A stretch of DNA of 64,000 bases, from positions 236,995,198 to 237,059,197 of the forward strand of contig NC_133622.1 in assembly GCF_048593235.1 (NCBI RefSeq), given 5' to 3'. Below the pieces are notes generated by a model that made no database searches, was not told where the DNA came from, and saw only the letters and a program-made list of their open reading frames with translations. Position numbers and translations under genes: made by a program. Numbering within the stretch: the first letter of the stretch is position 1; every line of letters begins with the position of its first letter. The stretch comes from Sminthopsis crassicaudata (lineage: Eukaryota). Below, piece by piece: positions 5,603 to 47,101 of the stretch.

Positions 5603-6535
5603 TCAACTGGAGCGTCCTTTCTGAGAGGAGTTCTTTAAACATAAGAGAGAAGGAAAAGACCTGGGCTTCTGAGTGTCAGTGGTGATCAGCACAATAGGGC
5701 TGATTATTGGATAAAACATGGAAAGTGAAACTGTGAAATCTAATGCCCAGTGTTTGATTTCTGCTGCAGAAGCTATGTAAATAACAAAAGGAGAACTGAC
5801 TGAATTAAAGCAAACAAATGTGACCACCAGCATCAGGACCGCTTTGGTGGCTCTAGTCTCAGGGGATGCTCTGAGAGAGGAGTTGATGCTGTGAATGTGT
5901 TGGACCCTCTTGATGTGTCTGTGCAAGATAAATACCATATATCCACTTGAGCCAACCATGAGACCCACAAACAGAATATGAATAACTGACTGACAAATTA
6001 AAATTTTTATAATATTCATGGCTTGCAAATCAAAAGAAATATGTCCAATCCTCCACCTTTCATTACTTCTGTTTCTTGGACTACTATAATTCATAGGTGC
6101 AGCAATATCAAGAAGGAGATTGAAAATCCAGCTGAGCATACAGCAGGAAGGAATACACTTTTGGGTTCTAGTTTTAAGTTGTGCCCACTTAAGACTGCTG
6201 GGGCTGATAGTGATGGCCTGGACGACACTCAGGAGGCAAGTGCTGCAAAGAGAAAGCCCCCGGGTCACTCTCATGACATAAAGTAAGATTTTACCCAGTA
6301 TTTCATCTTGGAAAGATAACCATTTCCAATTGGTTGTAATTGTAGAGAAGCCCCTACAAAGAATCATTAAGACATGGGCAAAGGCCATATTTATGATGAT
6401 CAGGCTGATGAGTCTTTTCCTGTGGGCAGTGATGAACTTGTGAATGTGTAGATAAAGAAGGGACATGTTCCCCAGAACTCCAAAGAAAAACATGGTCAAG
6501 TAGACAATGACCAAGCTATCTTTATGAGAGCCCAT
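5603..6535 (-). CDS. Vomeronasal type-1 receptor (V1R), copy 1. 310 aa from the preferred Met; the ORF extends upstream to 6604 (333 aa).
   Basis: Seven hydrophobic segments. V1R motifs GVLGNMSLL, RVTRGLSLCSTCLLSVVQAITISP, LHRHIKRVQHIHS and SPETRATKAVLMLV. ECL2 sequons NYS and NRS. Open frame ending in TGA. Confidence 0.95.
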   Translation of the reverse strand: MGSHKDSLVIVYLTMFFFGVLGNMSLLYLHIHKFITAHRKRLISLIIINMAFAHVLMILCRGFSTITTNWKWLSFQDEILGKILLYVMRVTRGLSLCSTCLLSVVQAITISPSSLKWAQLKTRTQKCIPSCCMLSWIFNLLLDIAAPMNYSSPRNRSNERWRIGHISFDLQAMNIIKILICQSVIHILFVGLMVGSSGYMVFILHRHIKRVQHIHSINSSLRASPETRATKAVLMLVVTFVCFNSVSSPFVIYIASAAEIKHWALDFTVSLSMFYPIISPIVLITTDTQKPRSFPSLLCLKNSSQKGRSS

Positions 6536-6582
6536 TCCTTGAGGGATTCCTTGGAGAACTTTGCTGTCAGCTCCAAAGTGAC

Positions 6583-6615
6583 CTGGGGAGAAATGAAGGA
6601 GCATGTGACTTTTCC
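6583..6615 (-). promoter_or_regulatory. 3' splice acceptor of the V1R coding exon. Homologs at 21534, 31924, 43702 and 55205.
   Basis: The minus strand reads ...CATGCTCCTTCATTTCTCCCCAG|GTCAC, a polypyrimidine tract plus CAG. The exon starts at 6582, 47 nt before an ATG in good context (GGAATGG). Confidence 0.65.
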
Positions 6616-9049: not shown

Positions 9050-9368
9050 NNNNNNNNNNNNNNNNNNNNNNNNNNNNNNNNNNNNNNNNNNNNNNNNNNN
9101 NNNNNNNNNNNNNNNNNNNNNNNNNNNNNNNNNNNNNNNNNNNNNNNNNNNNNNNNNNNNNNNNNNNNNNNNNNNNNNNNNNNNNNNNNNNNNNNNNNNN
9201 NNNNNNNNNNNNNNNNNNNNNNNNNNNNNNNNNNNNNNNNNNNNNNNNNNNNNNNNNNNNNNNNNNNNNNNNNNNNNNNNNNNNNNNNNNNNNNNNNNNN
9301 NNNNNNNNNNNNNNNNNNNNNNNNNNNNNNNNNNNNNNNNNNNNNNNNNNNNNNNNNNNNNNNNNNNN
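9050..9368. other. N run (gap or masked sequence), 319 nt
   Basis: Ns directly follow a CT-rich tract. Confidence 1.
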
Positions 9369-20553: not shown

Positions 20554-21486
20554 TCAACTGGAGGGTCTTTTCTGAGAGGAGTTCTTTAAACATAAGACAG
20601 AAGCAAAAGACCTGGGCTTCTGAGTGTCAGTGGTGATCAGGACAAAAGGACTAATTATTGGATAAAACATAGTAAGTGCAACTGTGAAATCTAATGCCCA
20701 GTGTCTGATTTCTGTTGCAGAAGCTATATAAATAACAAAAGGAGAACTTACTGAATTAAAGCAAAGAAATGTGACCACCAGCATCAGGACTGCTTTCGTG
20801 ACTCTAGTCTCAGGGGATGCTCTGCGGGAGGAGTTGATGCTGTGAATGTGTTGGACTCTCTTGATGTGTCTGTGCAAAATAAATACCATATATCCACTTG
20901 AGCCAACCATGAGACCTACAAACAGAGCATGAACAACTGACTCAAAAATTAGAATTTTTATAATATTCATGGCTTGTAAGTCAAAAGAAATATGTCCAAT
21001 CCTCCACCTTTCATTACTTCTGTTTCTTGGGCTACTATAATTCATAGGTGCAGCAATATCAAGAAGAAGATTGAAAAACCAACTGAGCATACAGCAGGAA
21101 GGAATACACTTTTGGGTTCTAGTTTTAACTTGTGACCACTTAAGGCTGCTGGGGCTGATAGTGATGGCCTGGACAACACTCAGGAGGCAGGTGCTGCAAA
21201 GAGAAAGGCCCCGGGTCACTCTCATGACATAAATTAAGATTTTACCCATTGTTTCATCTAGAGAAGATATCCATTTCCATTTGGTTATTATTGTAGAGAA
21301 GCCCCTGCAAAGAATCATTAAGACATGGGCAAAGGCCATATTTATGATGATCAGGCTGATGAGTCTTTTCCTGTGAGCAGTGATGAACTTGTGAATGTGT
21401 AGATAAAGAAGGAACATGTTGCCCAGAACTCCAAAGAAAAGCATGGTCAAGTAGATAATGACCAAGCTATCTCTATGAAAGCTCAT
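20554..21486 (-). CDS. V1R copy 2. 310 aa from the preferred Met; the ORF extends upstream to 21555.
   Basis: Open 7TM frame with the same V1R motifs. Shares clade residues with copy 1 (CRGFST, YVMRVTRG, LHRHIKRV, WALDF). Confidence 0.95.
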   Translation of the reverse strand: MSFHRDSLVIIYLTMLFFGVLGNMFLLYLHIHKFITAHRKRLISLIIINMAFAHVLMILCRGFSTIITKWKWISSLDETMGKILIYVMRVTRGLSLCSTCLLSVVQAITISPSSLKWSQVKTRTQKCIPSCCMLSWFFNLLLDIAAPMNYSSPRNRSNERWRIGHISFDLQAMNIIKILIFESVVHALFVGLMVGSSGYMVFILHRHIKRVQHIHSINSSRRASPETRVTKAVLMLVVTFLCFNSVSSPFVIYIASATEIRHWALDFTVALTMFYPIISPFVLITTDTQKPRSFASVLCLKNSSQKRPSS

Positions 21487-22143
21487 TCCTTGGGAGATTC
21501 CTTGGAGAATTTTGCTGTCAGCTCCAAAGTGACCTGGGGAGAAACATAGGAGCATGTGACTTTTCCAATATGAGGAATTCCCAATTCTACAACCTATTCA
21601 GCTTCTCTTTGAAGAGTGGTAAACCTTCCCAGATAATAATGCCATTCTAGTGTTCAGGAGACACGTATTTAATGTATCAATTCCAAATATTTATTATTAA
21701 GTATATATCTTAGAAATGAAACACTTCCAATCTGTTTCCATACCATATTTCTCTTCTTAGGATATGGTTATCACCTTTTTATAACCAGGATTTTGGACAA
21801 ACCTGGGATCTTTGGCTGTCACAAGTAAGTTTTGTTTTATCTTTCCAGGGTCCATGTTTCCAAACTATTTCTATTCCTTTGCTTCTTTTGCTTCCCCTTT
21901 GTGAAACCTGCCATTTTTTTGTTCTTTCATTAGAATGTAAGATCAAAGAGGGCAGAGATTTTTATCCTTATTACTATTACTTAGCACACTTTCTGCAGCA
22001 CATGTGATAAAGCTATTTTGATGGTGTTTTATATAATTAGAATTTGATGAGAATGAGTAAACTCTGCAGGTGTCAGCTCTCACTCTTAAAGGGTTAGTGA
22101 CCAGAAATGCTGGTGAATTGTTAAAATACAGGCCCTTAAAGGG

Positions 22144-30943: not shown

Positions 30944-31876
30944 TTAACTGGAGAGTCCTTCTTGAGAAGAGTTCTTTAAACATAAGAGAGAAGCAAAAGA
31001 CCTGGGCTTCTGAGTGTCAGTGGTGATCAGCACAAAAGGGCTGATTATTGGATAAAACATGGAAAGTGCAACTGTGAAACGTAATGCCCAGTGGCTGGTT
31101 TCTGCTGCAGAAGCTATGTAAATAACAAAAGGAGAACTGACTGAATTAAAGCAAAGAAATGTGGCCACCAGCATCAGGATGGCTTTGGTGGCTCTAGTCT
31201 CAGGGGATTCTCTGAGGGAGGAGTTGATGCTGTGAATATGTTGGACTCTCTGGTTGTGTGTGTGCAAGATAAATACCATATAGCCACTTGAGCCAACCAT
31301 GAGACCTACAAACAGAGTATCAACAATTGACTCACAAATTAAAATTTTTATAATATTCATGGCTTGCAAGTCAAGAGAAATATGTCCAATCCTCCACCTT
31401 TCATTACTTCTGTTTCTTGGACTACTATAATTCATAGGTGCAGCAATATCAAGAAGAAGATTGAAAATCCAGCTGAGCATACAGCAGGAAGGAATACACT
31501 TTTGGGTTCTAGTTTTAAGTTGTGCCCACTTAAGGCTGCTGGGGCTGATAGTGATGGCCTGGAAGACACTCAGGAGGCAGGTGCTGCAAAGAGAAAGGCC
31601 TCGGGTCACTCTTATGAGATAAGTTAAGATTTTACCCATTGTTTCATCTAGGAAAGATATCCATCCCCAGTTGGTTATTATTGTAGAGAAGGCCCTGAAA
31701 AGAATCATTAAGACATGGGCAAAGGCCATATTTATGATGATCAGGCTGATGAGTCTTTTCCTGTGAGCAGTGATGAACTTGTGAATGTGTAGATAAAGAA
31801 GGGACATGTTGCCCAGAACTCCAAAGAAAAGCATGGTCAAGTAGACAATGGCCAAACTATGTCTTTGAGAGCTCAT
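30944..31876 (-). CDS. V1R copy 3. 310 aa from the preferred Met; the ORF extends upstream to 31945.
   Basis: Open 7TM frame with V1R motifs and a TAA stop. Clade residues FRAFST, LHTHNQRV and ETSHWAL are shared with copies 4 and 5. Confidence 0.95.
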   Translation of the reverse strand: MSSQRHSLAIVYLTMLFFGVLGNMSLLYLHIHKFITAHRKRLISLIIINMAFAHVLMILFRAFSTIITNWGWISFLDETMGKILTYLIRVTRGLSLCSTCLLSVFQAITISPSSLKWAQLKTRTQKCIPSCCMLSWIFNLLLDIAAPMNYSSPRNRSNERWRIGHISLDLQAMNIIKILICESIVDTLFVGLMVGSSGYMVFILHTHNQRVQHIHSINSSLRESPETRATKAILMLVATFLCFNSVSSPFVIYIASAAETSHWALRFTVALSMFYPIISPFVLITTDTQKPRSFASLLCLKNSSQEGLSS

Positions 31877-32607
31877 TCCTTGAGGGATTCCTAGGAGCAC
31901 TTTGCTGTCAGCTCCAAAGTGACCTGGGGAGAAACATAGGAGCATGTGACTTTTCCAATGTGAGGAATTCCCAATTCTACGATGTACTCAGCTTCTCTTT
32001 GAAGAGTGATAAACCTTCCCAGATAATAGTGCCATTGTAGTGTTCAGGAGACATGTATTCAATGTATCAATTCACATATATTTACTGTTCATTAACTATA
32101 CATCTTACAATAAAATACTTCCCGTCTGTTTGCAAACCATATTTCTCCTCTTAGGACATGATTATCATATTCTATTATATTATATATTTCATATTGTATT
32201 ATATATTATATATATTATATTATATATTTTATCATTTTTATAACCAGGATTTTGGACAGACCTGGGATCTTCAGCTGTCACAGCTAAGCAGTTCTCTGAT
32301 GTTTCCAGCGTCCATGTTTCCAAGCTACTGCTTTTCCTTTGCTTCATGTGCTTCCCCTTTGTGAAATCTTTTTTTTATTCTTTCATTAGGATGTAAGATC
32401 CAAGAGGGCAGAGACTTTCTTGGATACTTTTACCCTTATTACTATTACTTAGCACACTTTCCATATGTGTTAAAGTTATTTTAATGGTGTGTTGTGTCAC
32501 TAGAATTTGATGAGAATGAGTAAACTCTGCAAGTGTCCAGCCTCTCACTCTTAAAGGGTTAGTGACCAGAAATGCTGGTGAATTGTTAAAATACAGGCCC
32601 TTAAAGG

Positions 32608-35001: not shown

Positions 35002-35296
35002 NNNNNNNNNNNNNNNNNNNNNNNNNNNNNNNNNNNNNNNNNNNNNNNNNNNNNNNNNNNNNNNNNNNNNNNNNNNNNNNNNNNNNNNNNNNNNNNNNNN
35101 NNNNNNNNNNNNNNNNNNNNNNNNNNNNNNNNNNNNNNNNNNNNNNNNNNNNNNNNNNNNNNNNNNNNNNNNNNNNNNNNNNNNNNNNNNNNNNNNNNNN
35201 NNNNNNNNNNNNNNNNNNNNNNNNNNNNNNNNNNNNNNNNNNNNNNNNNNNNNNNNNNNNNNNNNNNNNNNNNNNNNNNNNNNNNNNNNNNNNNNN
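35002..35296. other. N run, 295 nt
   Basis: Same position within the unit as 9050-9368. Confidence 1.
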
Positions 35297-42721: not shown

Positions 42722-43654
42722 TCAACTGGAGAGTCCTTCTTGAGAAGAGTTCTTTAAACATAAGAGAGAAGCAAAAGACCTGGACTTCTGAGTGTCAGTG
42801 GTGATCAGCACAATAGGGCTGATTATTGGATAAAACATGGAAAGTGCAACTGTGAAACGTAATGCCCAGTGGCTGGTTTCTGCTGCAGAAGCTATGTAAA
42901 TAACAAAAGGAGAACTGACTGAATTAAAGCAAAGAAATGTGGCCACCAGCATCAGGATGGCTTTGGTGGCTCTAGTCTCAGGGGATGCTCTGAGGGAGGA
43001 GTTGATGCTGTGAATGTGTTGGACTCTCTGGTTGTGTGTGTGCAAGATAAATACCATATAGCCACTCGAACCAACCATGAGACCCACAAACAGAGCATGA
43101 ATAACTGACTGACAAATTAAAATTTTTATAATACTCATGGCTTGCAAGTCAAGAGAAATATGTCCAATCCTCCACCTTTCATTACTTCTGTTTCTTGGAC
43201 TACTATAATTCATAGGTGCAGCAATATCAAGAAGAAGATTGAAAATCCAGCTGAGCATACAGCAGGAAGGAATACACTTTTGGGTTCTAGTTTTAAGTTG
43301 TGCCCACTTAAGGCTGCTGGGGCTGATAGTGATGGCCTGGACGACACTCAGGAGGCAGGTGCTGCAAAGAGAAAGGCTCCGGGTCACTCTTATGAGATAA
43401 GTTAAGATTTTACCCATTGTTTCATCTAGGAAAGATATCCATCCCCAGTTGGTTATTATTGTAGAGAAGGCCCTGAAAAGAATCATTAAGACATGGGCAA
43501 AGGCCATATTTATGATGATCAGGCTGATGAGTCTTTTCCTGTGAGCAGTGATGAACTTGTGAACGTGTAGATAAAGAAGGGACATGTTGCCCAGAACTCC
43601 AAAGAAAAGCATGGTCAAGTAGACAATGGCCAAACTATGTCTTTGAGAGCTCAT
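42722..43654 (-). CDS. V1R copy 4. 310 aa from the preferred Met; the ORF extends upstream to 43723.
   Basis: Open 7TM frame with V1R motifs. Confidence 0.95.
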   Translation of the reverse strand: MSSQRHSLAIVYLTMLFFGVLGNMSLLYLHVHKFITAHRKRLISLIIINMAFAHVLMILFRAFSTIITNWGWISFLDETMGKILTYLIRVTRSLSLCSTCLLSVVQAITISPSSLKWAQLKTRTQKCIPSCCMLSWIFNLLLDIAAPMNYSSPRNRSNERWRIGHISLDLQAMSIIKILICQSVIHALFVGLMVGSSGYMVFILHTHNQRVQHIHSINSSLRASPETRATKAILMLVATFLCFNSVSSPFVIYIASAAETSHWALRFTVALSMFYPIISPIVLITTDTQKSRSFASLLCLKNSSQEGLSS

Positions 43655-44388
43655 TCCTTGAGGGATTCCTAGGAGCACTTTGCTGTCAGCTCCAAAGTGA
43701 CCTGGGGAGAAACATAGATGCATGTGACTTTTCCAATGTGAGGAATTCCCAATTCTACGATGTACTCAGCTTCTCTTTGAGCAGTGATAAACCTTCCCAG
43801 ATAATAGTGCCATTGTAGTGTTCAGGAGACATATATTCAATGTATCAATTCACATATATTTACTGTTCATTAACTATACATCTTACAATAAAATACTTCC
43901 CGTCTGTTTGCAAACCATATTTCTCCTCTTAGGACATGATTATCATATTCTATTATATTATATATTTCATATTGTATTATATATTATATATATTATATTA
44001 TATATTTTATCATTTTTATAACCAGGATTTTGGACAGACCTGGGATCTTCAGCTGTCACAGCTAAGCAGTTCTCTGATGTTTCCAGCGTCCATGTTTCCA
44101 AGCTACTGCTTTTCCTTTGCTTCATGTGCTTCCCCTTTGTGAAATCTTTTTTTTATTCTTTCATTAGAATGTAAGATCCAAGAGGGCAGAGACTTTCTTG
44201 GATACTTTTACCCTTATTACTATTACTTAGCACACTTTCCATATGTGTTAAAGTTATTTTAATGGTGTGTTGTGTAACTAGAATTTGATGAGAATGAGTA
44301 AACTCTGCAGGTGTCAGCTCTCACTCTTAAAGGGTTAGTGACCAGAAATGCTGGTGAAGTGTTAAAATACAGGCCCTTAAATAGTGTA

Positions 44389-46812: not shown

Positions 46813-47101
46813 NNNNNNNNNNNNNNNNNNNNNNNNNNNNNNNNNNNNNNNNNNNNNNNNNNNNNNNNNNNNNNNNNNNNNNNNNNNNNNNNNNNNNNNN
46901 NNNNNNNNNNNNNNNNNNNNNNNNNNNNNNNNNNNNNNNNNNNNNNNNNNNNNNNNNNNNNNNNNNNNNNNNNNNNNNNNNNNNNNNNNNNNNNNNNNNN
47001 NNNNNNNNNNNNNNNNNNNNNNNNNNNNNNNNNNNNNNNNNNNNNNNNNNNNNNNNNNNNNNNNNNNNNNNNNNNNNNNNNNNNNNNNNNNNNNNNNNNN
47101 N
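46813..47101. other. N run, 289 nt
   Basis: Homologous position within the unit. Confidence 1.

What the first reader, a model, noticed from the sequence alone, without database searches (positions are those of the whole stretch)
6030..6300. All five V1Rs appear to lack both cysteines of the TM3-ECL2 disulfide
V1Rs typically have GCK at the top of TM3 (Cys eight residues before the R of RVxRG) and a YC motif in ECL2, thought to form a disulfide. Here the TM3 position is Gly (LGK or MGK; codon GGT at 6293-6295 in copy 1). The ECL2 position reads GHIS instead of GYCS (ATT at 6038-6040), and ECL2 has no Cys at all. The paired loss is fixed in all five open paralogs, and ECL2 (NYSSP[R/K]NRSNERWRIGHIS) is almost invariant and Arg/Trp-rich with two sequons. 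This suggests a functional disulfide-less V1R subfamily with an unusual extracellular lid, resembling the related TAS2Rs, which lack this bridge.
Basis: partly seen in the sequence, partly recalled or inferred. Interest (0 to 1): 0.7.

Follow-up and report, generated by a model that had tools for sequence, protein, structure and literature searches.

The report
Marsupial pheromone receptors lacking the disulfide
Five intact tandem vomeronasal type-1 receptor genes of a dunnart lack both cysteines of the bond that normally ties extracellular loop 2 to helix 3, a trait inherited from an old, marsupial-wide receptor clade that has remained under purifying selection.

Summary
All five V1R ORFs have Gly (GGT) at the TM3-top site and Ile (ATT) at the ECL2 site. 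Eutherian, platypus and many marsupial V1Rs have Cys at both sites. The five proteins have no extracellular cysteine at all.

The loss is not specific to this locus. It marks one nested, marsupial-only clade of about 90 sampled sequences. That clade includes American opossums and every Australasian order sampled, so the loss predates crown marsupials. In trees it appears as a single event.

The loss is not general either. A second marsupial V1R family is 115/118 Cys/Cys, and 75 of 89 diverse representatives are Cys/Cys.

Orthologues from devil to opossum give dN/dS of 0.30-0.66, with p as low as 1e-11, so these are constrained genes.

Two sister subclades each carry a private cysteine pair at shifted ECL1/TM3 and ECL2 positions, which look like relocated bridges. 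The window's subclade and the basal 'IGFSA' lineage carry no such pair. The window's subclade instead conserves an ERW-R-IGH loop motif.

Expression could not be tested, and the AlphaFold model of ECL2 has low confidence.

No paper found describes this loss. The scan noted the same trait earlier on a window 51 kb upstream in this genome.

The parts
5603..6535 (-). V1R copy 1. This is the 310-aa form starting at the Met conserved in orthologues. The mechanical ORF runs on to 6604.
   Evidence: ORF. Pfam V1R 202 bits. The upstream in-frame ATG is absent or blocked by stops in devil, wombat, possum, monito and opossum.
20554..21486 (-). V1R copy 2 (310 aa). Gly codon at 21244-21246, Ile codon at 20989-20991.
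30944..31876 (-). V1R copy 3 (310 aa). Gly codon at 31634-31636, Ile codon at 31379-31381.
42722..43654 (-). V1R copy 4 (310 aa). Gly codon at 43412-43414, Ile codon at 43157-43159.
54183..55157 (-). V1R copy 5 (324 aa). A 2-bp deletion near 54264-54270 replaces the last 13 residues of the cytoplasmic tail with a different 27-residue tail. Gly codon at 54915-54917, Ile codon at 54660-54662.
   Evidence: The protein is identical to P0003, the window's own protein.
6293..6295 (-). GGT, Gly104 of copy 1 (mechanical-ORF numbering), at the TM3-top site. Canonical V1Rs have Cys here.
6038..6040 (-). ATT, Ile189 of copy 1, at the ECL2 site. Canonical V1Rs have Cys here, in the G-Y-C-S motif.
6035..6091 (-). 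ECL2 motif, residues 172-190. It has two N-glycosylation sequons (N172-x-S, N178-x-S), the ERW-R-IGH core, and no Cys.
   Evidence: Across 42 clade members: N178 in 42/42, S180 in 40/42, E182 in 39/42, W184 in 41/42, G187 in 41/42, S190 in 42/42.

Best explanation
These are five recently duplicated, functional vomeronasal type-1 receptor genes of the fat-tailed dunnart (Sminthopsis crassicaudata). They sit in tandem units of roughly 10-15 kb, about 11.5 kb for copies 3-5.

They belong to a marsupial-specific V1R clade. Its common ancestor lived before opossums and Australasian marsupials split, and it lost both cysteines of the canonical TM3-ECL2 disulfide in what appears to be a single event.

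The window's subclade carries no extracellular cysteine, so it works with no extracellular disulfide at all.

Inferred, not shown: ECL2 is held over the pocket non-covalently. The candidates for this are the clade-invariant Trp184 with its Arg/His neighbours, a small Gly at the old TM3 Cys site, and two N-glycans. This would give a lid that is not covalently tethered, as in TAS2Rs.

Two sister subclades appear to have restored a covalent tether with new cysteine pairs at shifted positions.
For: Identity and family
- Pfam V1R at about 200 bits against TAS2R at about 45-49 bits.
- The AF2 model is a 7TM fold. Its best PDB match is TAS2R4, followed by class A GPCRs.

Species
- Copy 5 is identical to P0003, which lies on the 258-Mb contig that also carries proteins named Sminthopsis crassicaudata.

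Homology of the two sites
-. The review PMC12294341 lists a Cys between TM2 and TM3 and a Cys between TM4 and TM5 among V1R-conserved residues.

Single old loss
- The marsupial clade has support 100.
- The nested Cys-less clade has SH-aLRT 87 with the two trait columns removed, and 96/97 in a careful 46-row tree.
- Every Cys-less subclade holds both opossum and Australasian members.
- Minimum changes on the tree are 2 for the ECL2 Cys and 3 for the TM3 Cys.
- The only member with a TM3 Cys (P0123) is nested among Ser/Lys relatives, which points to a reversion.

Not a general trait
- 115/118 Cys/Cys in another marsupial V1R family.
- 75/89 Cys/Cys among diverse representatives.

Constraint
- dN/dS is 0.25-0.68 among the paralogs.
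- dN/dS is 0.30-0.66 among orthologues of five other species, with Fisher p as low as 1e-11.
- The CDS is 93% identical between copy 1 and the other copies, against 82-89% for the flanks.

No extracellular Cys in the clade, and private pairs in sister clades
- The pair at positions 101+175 is in 7/7 members of one sister clade. The pair at 97+184 is in 19/19 of another. Both are at 0% elsewhere.

Loop conservation
- ECL2 residues 178-191 are relatively better conserved in Cys-less clades (ratio to the rest of the protein 1.07-1.13) than in Cys/Cys clades (0.72-0.97).
Against: - Expression in the vomeronasal organ was not shown.
- The non-covalent lid is inference. AF2 gives ECL2 a pLDDT of about 41 with no secondary structure, so contacts between Trp184, Gly104 and Ile189 could not be examined.
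- The paralog dN/dS values (0.55-0.68 for several pairs) show only moderate constraint, and are only weakly significant for recent pairs (p = 0.03-0.07).
- With essentially one loss event, the perfect co-occurrence of the two losses carries no phylogenetically independent statistical weight.
Confidence: 0.8

Rival explanations
1. The genes are young, decaying duplicates. The loss of the cysteines is part of neutral degeneration, and the ORFs are open only because they duplicated recently.
For: The paralogs are 93-98% identical, so open frames alone prove little. Copy 5 already has a 2-bp deletion that alters its tail. Some paralog dN/dS values reach 0.6-0.68.
Against: The same Gly/Ile state and intact 309-328-aa ORFs persist in devil, wombat, possum, monito del monte and opossum. 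Their dN/dS is 0.30-0.46 with p from 1e-5 to 1e-11. The ECL2 core is nearly invariant in 42 clade members. The CDS is more conserved than its flanks.
Confidence: 0.05
2. The disulfide is not lost but moved. The window proteins would use another cysteine pair to tether ECL2, and the apparent loss would come from looking only at the canonical columns.
For: Exactly this seems to have happened in two sister subclades, with private pairs at positions 101+175 and 97+184. PMC4132921 describes a shifted EC1 Cys in Latimeria T2Rs.
Against: The five window proteins, and 41 of 45 members of their subclade, have no Cys in the N-terminus, ECL1, ECL2 or ECL3. The four exceptions each have a single unpaired Cys. 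The remaining cysteines lie inside TM2-TM6 or in the C-terminal tail.
Confidence: 0.03
3. The receptors are functional, but ECL2 is truly untethered and flexible like a TAS2R loop. This would widen pocket access and ligand range. No ordered non-covalent lid would replace the bridge.
For: With nearly the same alignment, AF2 gives the Cys-less protein an unstructured ECL2 at pLDDT about 41. A Cys/Cys wombat relative gets pLDDT about 68 with beta bridges. PMC11641376 links the missing bridge in T2Rs to a flexible, broad pocket.
Against: A flexible loop free of structural duty should evolve fast. Instead, ECL2 residues 178-191 are better conserved relative to the rest of the protein in Cys-less clades than in Cys/Cys clades, and Trp184 is in 41/42 members. 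pLDDT is not a measure of flexibility.
Confidence: 0.3

Closest known systems
Canonical mammalian V1Rs (eutherian VN1R1-4-like, platypus ornAnaV1R, marsupial Cys/Cys subfamilies)
   Same: Pfam V1R match. Single-exon gene of about 310 aa. The conserved TM3 segment, the conserved TM5-ICL3 His-rich motif, the ECL2 sequon and the tandem-cluster organisation are all present.
   Different: Both conserved extracellular cysteines are replaced (Gly104, Ile189). ECL2 carries an ERW-R-IGH core in place of the K-D-x-G-Y-C-S type.
TAS2R bitter taste receptors
   Same: They are the sister family of V1Rs: secondary Pfam hit and best structural match TAS2R4. The T2R family lacks the TM3-ECL2 disulfide (PMC11641376).
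   Different: The window proteins score about 200 bits on V1R against about 45-49 bits on TAS2R. They nest inside mammalian V1Rs in trees. Here the loss is secondary within a family that otherwise keeps the bridge.
Latimeria T2Rs with a shifted EC1 cysteine (PMC4132921)
   Same: This is a precedent in the V1R/T2R superfamily for losing the conserved EC1 Cys and compensating with a Cys at another position. It resembles the private pairs of the two sister subclades.
   Different: There only one partner moved and the EC2 Cys stayed. Here both canonical Cys were lost, and in the window's subclade nothing replaced them.
Class A GPCRs without the TM3-ECL2 bridge (lipid receptors such as S1P1, LPA1 and CB1; MC4R). 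This comparison rests on general knowledge and was not tested here.
   Same: They are functional rhodopsin-like receptors that lack the canonical bridge. CB1, CB2 and an S1P receptor appear among the structural matches.
   Different: They are unrelated subfamilies. Several of them use other intra-loop disulfides, whereas the window proteins have no extracellular Cys.

Membership tests
V1R (vomeronasal type-1 receptor, Pfam PF03402) | Sequence match to the family profile above the curated threshold | tested here: met
   197-213 bits against a cutoff of 25 for all five copies. The nearest database proteins are named vomeronasal type-1 receptors.
V1R (vomeronasal type-1 receptor, Pfam PF03402) | Seven-transmembrane GPCR fold, about 300-310 aa, uninterrupted coding exon | tested here: met
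   AF2 predicts seven helices plus helix 8, pTM 0.76. PDB matches are all GPCRs. Each ORF is single and uninterrupted.
V1R (vomeronasal type-1 receptor, Pfam PF03402) | Conserved Cys between TM2 and TM3 and conserved Cys between TM4 and TM5 (listed as V1R-conserved residues in PMC12294341) | tested here: not met
   Gly and Ile occupy these columns in all five copies. This departs from a conserved feature but does not argue against membership, because the proteins nest within V1Rs in trees.
V1R (vomeronasal type-1 receptor, Pfam PF03402) | Phylogenetic placement inside mammalian V1Rs | tested here: met
   The proteins nest in a marsupial clade that groups with the eutherian VN1R-like clade, with platypus V1Rs outside when these are used as the outgroup.
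V1R (vomeronasal type-1 receptor, Pfam PF03402) | Expression in vomeronasal sensory neurons | not testable with these tools
TAS2R (Pfam PF05296) | Best profile match is to TAS2R, with placement among T2Rs | tested here: not met
   TAS2R scores 43-49 bits, far below the V1R score of about 200 bits. All near homologues are V1Rs.

The most novel reading that the evidence does not exclude
After one ancestral loss of the canonical TM3-ECL2 disulfide in a marsupial V1R lineage, the descendants took three routes. Two subfamilies independently re-created a covalent tether with new cysteine pairs at shifted ECL1/TM3 and ECL2 positions (97+184 and 101+175). The window's subfamily put an invariant Trp at position 184, the position that became Cys in one of those sisters, and built a non-covalent lid. 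The basal 'IGFSA' lineage also stayed without a pair. Together they would form a natural series showing that the most conserved extracellular feature of rhodopsin-like GPCRs can be deleted, moved or replaced.
Probability: 0.45. Interest if true: 0.65.

Novelty: new variant of a known kind. Interest (0 to 1): 0.5.

Why it matters
The TM3-ECL2 disulfide is one of the most conserved features of rhodopsin-like GPCRs, and it shapes the lid over the ligand pocket. Here a whole receptor clade has worked without it since before the opossum-Australasian split. Its sister clades carry candidate relocated bridges, and its close relatives keep the original one.

This offers a matched natural set for asking what the bridge contributes to folding, surface trafficking and ligand range in chemosensory receptors. 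V1Rs are notoriously hard to express and to match with ligands. The finding also gives marsupial V1R annotation a simple sequence marker for this clade. The five genes themselves are otherwise ordinary tandem V1R duplicates.

Tried and rejected
2. PDB sequence search found only marginal class A hits and no solved V1R.
3. AF2 could not show the geometry of the two sites. ECL2 has low confidence, and coordinates are not exposed.
4. A phylogenetically corrected test of coupling between the two losses has no power, with only 3 independent contrasts.
5. ECL2 invariance among the five paralogs as evidence of constraint was rejected (p = 0.09).
6. The 333-aa mechanical ORF start was rejected. The upstream ATG is not conserved in other species.
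7. Grus 2005 and Young 2010 are not held in the paper library. Whether they mention the cysteines is therefore unknown.

Full report
**What is in the window.** The minus strand carries exactly five long ORFs: 5603-6604, 20554-21555, 30944-31945, 42722-43723 and 54183-55226. A local tblastn finds no further V1R pieces.
- All five match Pfam V1R at 197-213 bits. Each also has a much weaker TAS2R match of 43-49 bits.
- They lie in tandem duplication units. Copies 3, 4 and 5 sit in 11.5-kb units that are 96-98% identical. Copies 1 and 2 are older: their CDS is about 93% identical to the others, and the flanks are 82-89% identical.
- Copy 5 is identical to P0003, which the search tool marks as the window's own protein. 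P0003 lies on a 258-Mb contig that also carries proteins named Sminthopsis crassicaudata. The genome is therefore the fat-tailed dunnart.
- The first 23 codons of each mechanical ORF are probably not translated. In devil, wombat, possum, monito del monte and opossum the upstream ATG is missing or blocked by stops. The conserved start is Met24, giving 310 aa.

**The observation.**
All five copies have the same two codons.
- In a MAFFT alignment of the five proteins with 120 database relatives, Gly104 and Ile189 fall in two columns that are Cys in every eutherian and platypus sequence. Over all 125 rows the states are 51 Cys/Cys, 74 neither, and none mixed.
- Marsupial Cys/Cys relatives have an ECL2 of the same length, so the G-H-I-S to G-Y-C-S correspondence is direct.
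- A profile built only from eutherian and platypus sequences again aligns Gly104 to the Cys column, and shows no Cys in the window's ECL2.
- A review lists a Cys between TM2 and TM3 and a Cys between TM4 and TM5 among the V1R-conserved residues (PMC12294341).
- The window proteins have no Cys in the N-terminus or in any extracellular loop.

**How widespread the loss is.** It is neither private to this locus nor general.
- With the two trait columns removed, the tree recovers a marsupial-only clade of 88 rows (SH-aLRT 100). Three basal subclades keep both Cys (12 rows). A nested clade of 76 rows (SH-aLRT 87) has lost them.
- A careful 46-row tree supports the Cys-less clade at 96/97 and the marsupial clade at 100/99. 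The trait columns were not removed in that tree.
- Each Cys-less subclade contains Monodelphis or Gracilinanus together with Australasian species. The loss and the later diversification therefore predate the crown-marsupial split.
- The minimum number of changes on the tree is 2 for the ECL2 Cys and 3 for the TM3 Cys.
- The one clade member with a TM3 Cys (P0123, sugar glider) is nested among relatives with Ser or Lys at that site, which points to a reversion.
- Outside this clade the pair is the rule. A second marsupial V1R family, sampled with P0100, is 115 Cys/Cys, 3 with only the TM3 Cys, and 0 double losses.
- Of 89 near-full-length representatives of 50%-identity clusters, 75 are Cys/Cys. 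Only two lack both, and one of these belongs to the marsupial clade.

**Function.**
- Orthologue DNA was fetched for devil, wombat, brushtail possum, monito del monte and opossum. All have intact ORFs with GGT at the TM3 site and ATT at the ECL2 site (GTT in opossum).
- Pairwise Nei-Gojobori dN/dS is 0.30-0.66. Fisher p values reach 1e-11 for the deeper pairs.
- Among the five paralogs dN/dS is 0.25-0.68.
- The clade is therefore under purifying selection, and neutral decay is rejected at the clade level.
- Expression could not be examined.

**The loop.**
- Among the five paralogs, one variable site in the 19-residue motif is not significant (p = 0.09).
- Across 42 members of the subclade, the core is strongly conserved: N178 42/42, S180 40/42, E182 39/42, W184 41/42, G187 41/42, S190 42/42.
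- Relative to the rest of the protein, residues 178-191 are better conserved in the three large Cys-less subclades (ratios 1.07-1.13) than in marsupial Cys/Cys (0.97), platypus (0.94) or eutherian (0.72) groups.
- AF2 gives the window protein mean pLDDT 77.7, with ECL2 at about 41 and unstructured.
- With nearly the same alignment, a wombat Cys/Cys relative gets pLDDT 88.1, with ECL2 at about 68 and beta bridges.
- This hints at a less defined loop, but it is not a measurement.

**Relocated pairs in sister subclades.** A census of Cys columns by clade gave an unexpected result.
- The 'VS' subclade has Cys in 7/7 members at positions 101 and 175.
- The 'IR' subclade has Cys in 19/19 members at positions 97 and 184. 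Two further members found later show the same pair.
- Both pairs are at 0% in every other group.
- Each pair joins the ECL1/TM3-top region to ECL2, so they are candidate relocated bridges.
- Position 184 is the invariant Trp of the window's subclade.
- A shifted EC1 Cys has been described in Latimeria T2Rs (PMC4132921).
- The window's subclade and the basal 'IGFSA' lineage (13 members) have no such pair.

**Comparison and novelty.**
- The proteins are V1Rs by profile, fold and phylogeny. They depart from the family in one conserved feature.
- They resemble TAS2Rs in lacking the bridge (PMC11641376). TAS2R4 is the best structural match. They are not TAS2Rs.
- Searches of the paper library for V1R with disulfide, cysteine, marsupial or opossum found no description of this loss. 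Two key V1R repertoire papers are not held.
The present work was done independently of it. It adds the relocated pairs, the second-family survey and the control model.

**Limits.**
- There are no coordinates for distance checks and no expression data.
- Nei-Gojobori estimates were used rather than codon models.
- The database searches list at most 120-150 best hits, so this is not a complete census.
After none of their DNA letters were sent to a search tool.
- The N runs at 9050-9368, 35002-35296, 46813-47101 and 58274-58530 were left untouched.

Noticed in passing
relatives P0042-P0046, P0048, P0051 (positions 101 and 175 in copy-1 numbering); P0055-P0080 'IR' group, P0121, P0400, P0402 (positions 97 and 184): Two sister subclades of the Cys-less clade each carry a private, fully conserved cysteine pair that links the ECL1/TM3-top region to ECL2. 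These are candidate relocated disulfides. Position 184 is the invariant Trp in the window's subclade.
   Followed up: partly
window 54264-54270 (copy 5): A 2-bp deletion near codon 297 of the 310-aa form shifts the frame. The last 13 residues are replaced by a different 27-residue cytoplasmic tail. The rest of the gene is intact.
   Followed up: partly
window 6536-6604 and the equivalent 69 bases upstream of Met24 in the other four copies: All five copies share an in-frame upstream ATG that adds 23 codons. It is absent or interrupted by stops in five other marsupials. It is probably 5' UTR rather than coding sequence.
   Followed up: yes
P0123 (Petaurus), relative of the basal 'IGFSA' lineage: This is the only member of the Cys-less clade with a Cys at the TM3 site and no ECL2 partner. 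It is nested among Ser/Lys relatives, so it looks like a single-base reversion that leaves an unpaired extracellular Cys.
   Followed up: partly
marsupial Cys/Cys subclades (P0049-P0054, P0056, P0060-P0062, P0071, P0072, P0078): The Cys/Cys members of this marsupial cluster among the listed hits come only from diprotodonts, Dromiciops and the bilby. None comes from dasyurids or opossums. In the dunnart the cluster may hold only Cys-less or relocated-pair genes. Only the top 120 hits were seen.
   Followed up: no
window 9050-9368, 35002-35296, 46813-47101, 58274-58530: N runs of about 260-320 bases recur at matching positions in four repeat units (downstream of copies 1, 3, 4 and 5).
   Followed up: no
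P0204 (unnamed representative, groups with eutherian squirrel and meerkat V1Rs): This is a lone sequence outside marsupials that lacks both Cys. It sits on a long branch. It may be a sporadic second loss or a decayed gene model.
   Followed up: no
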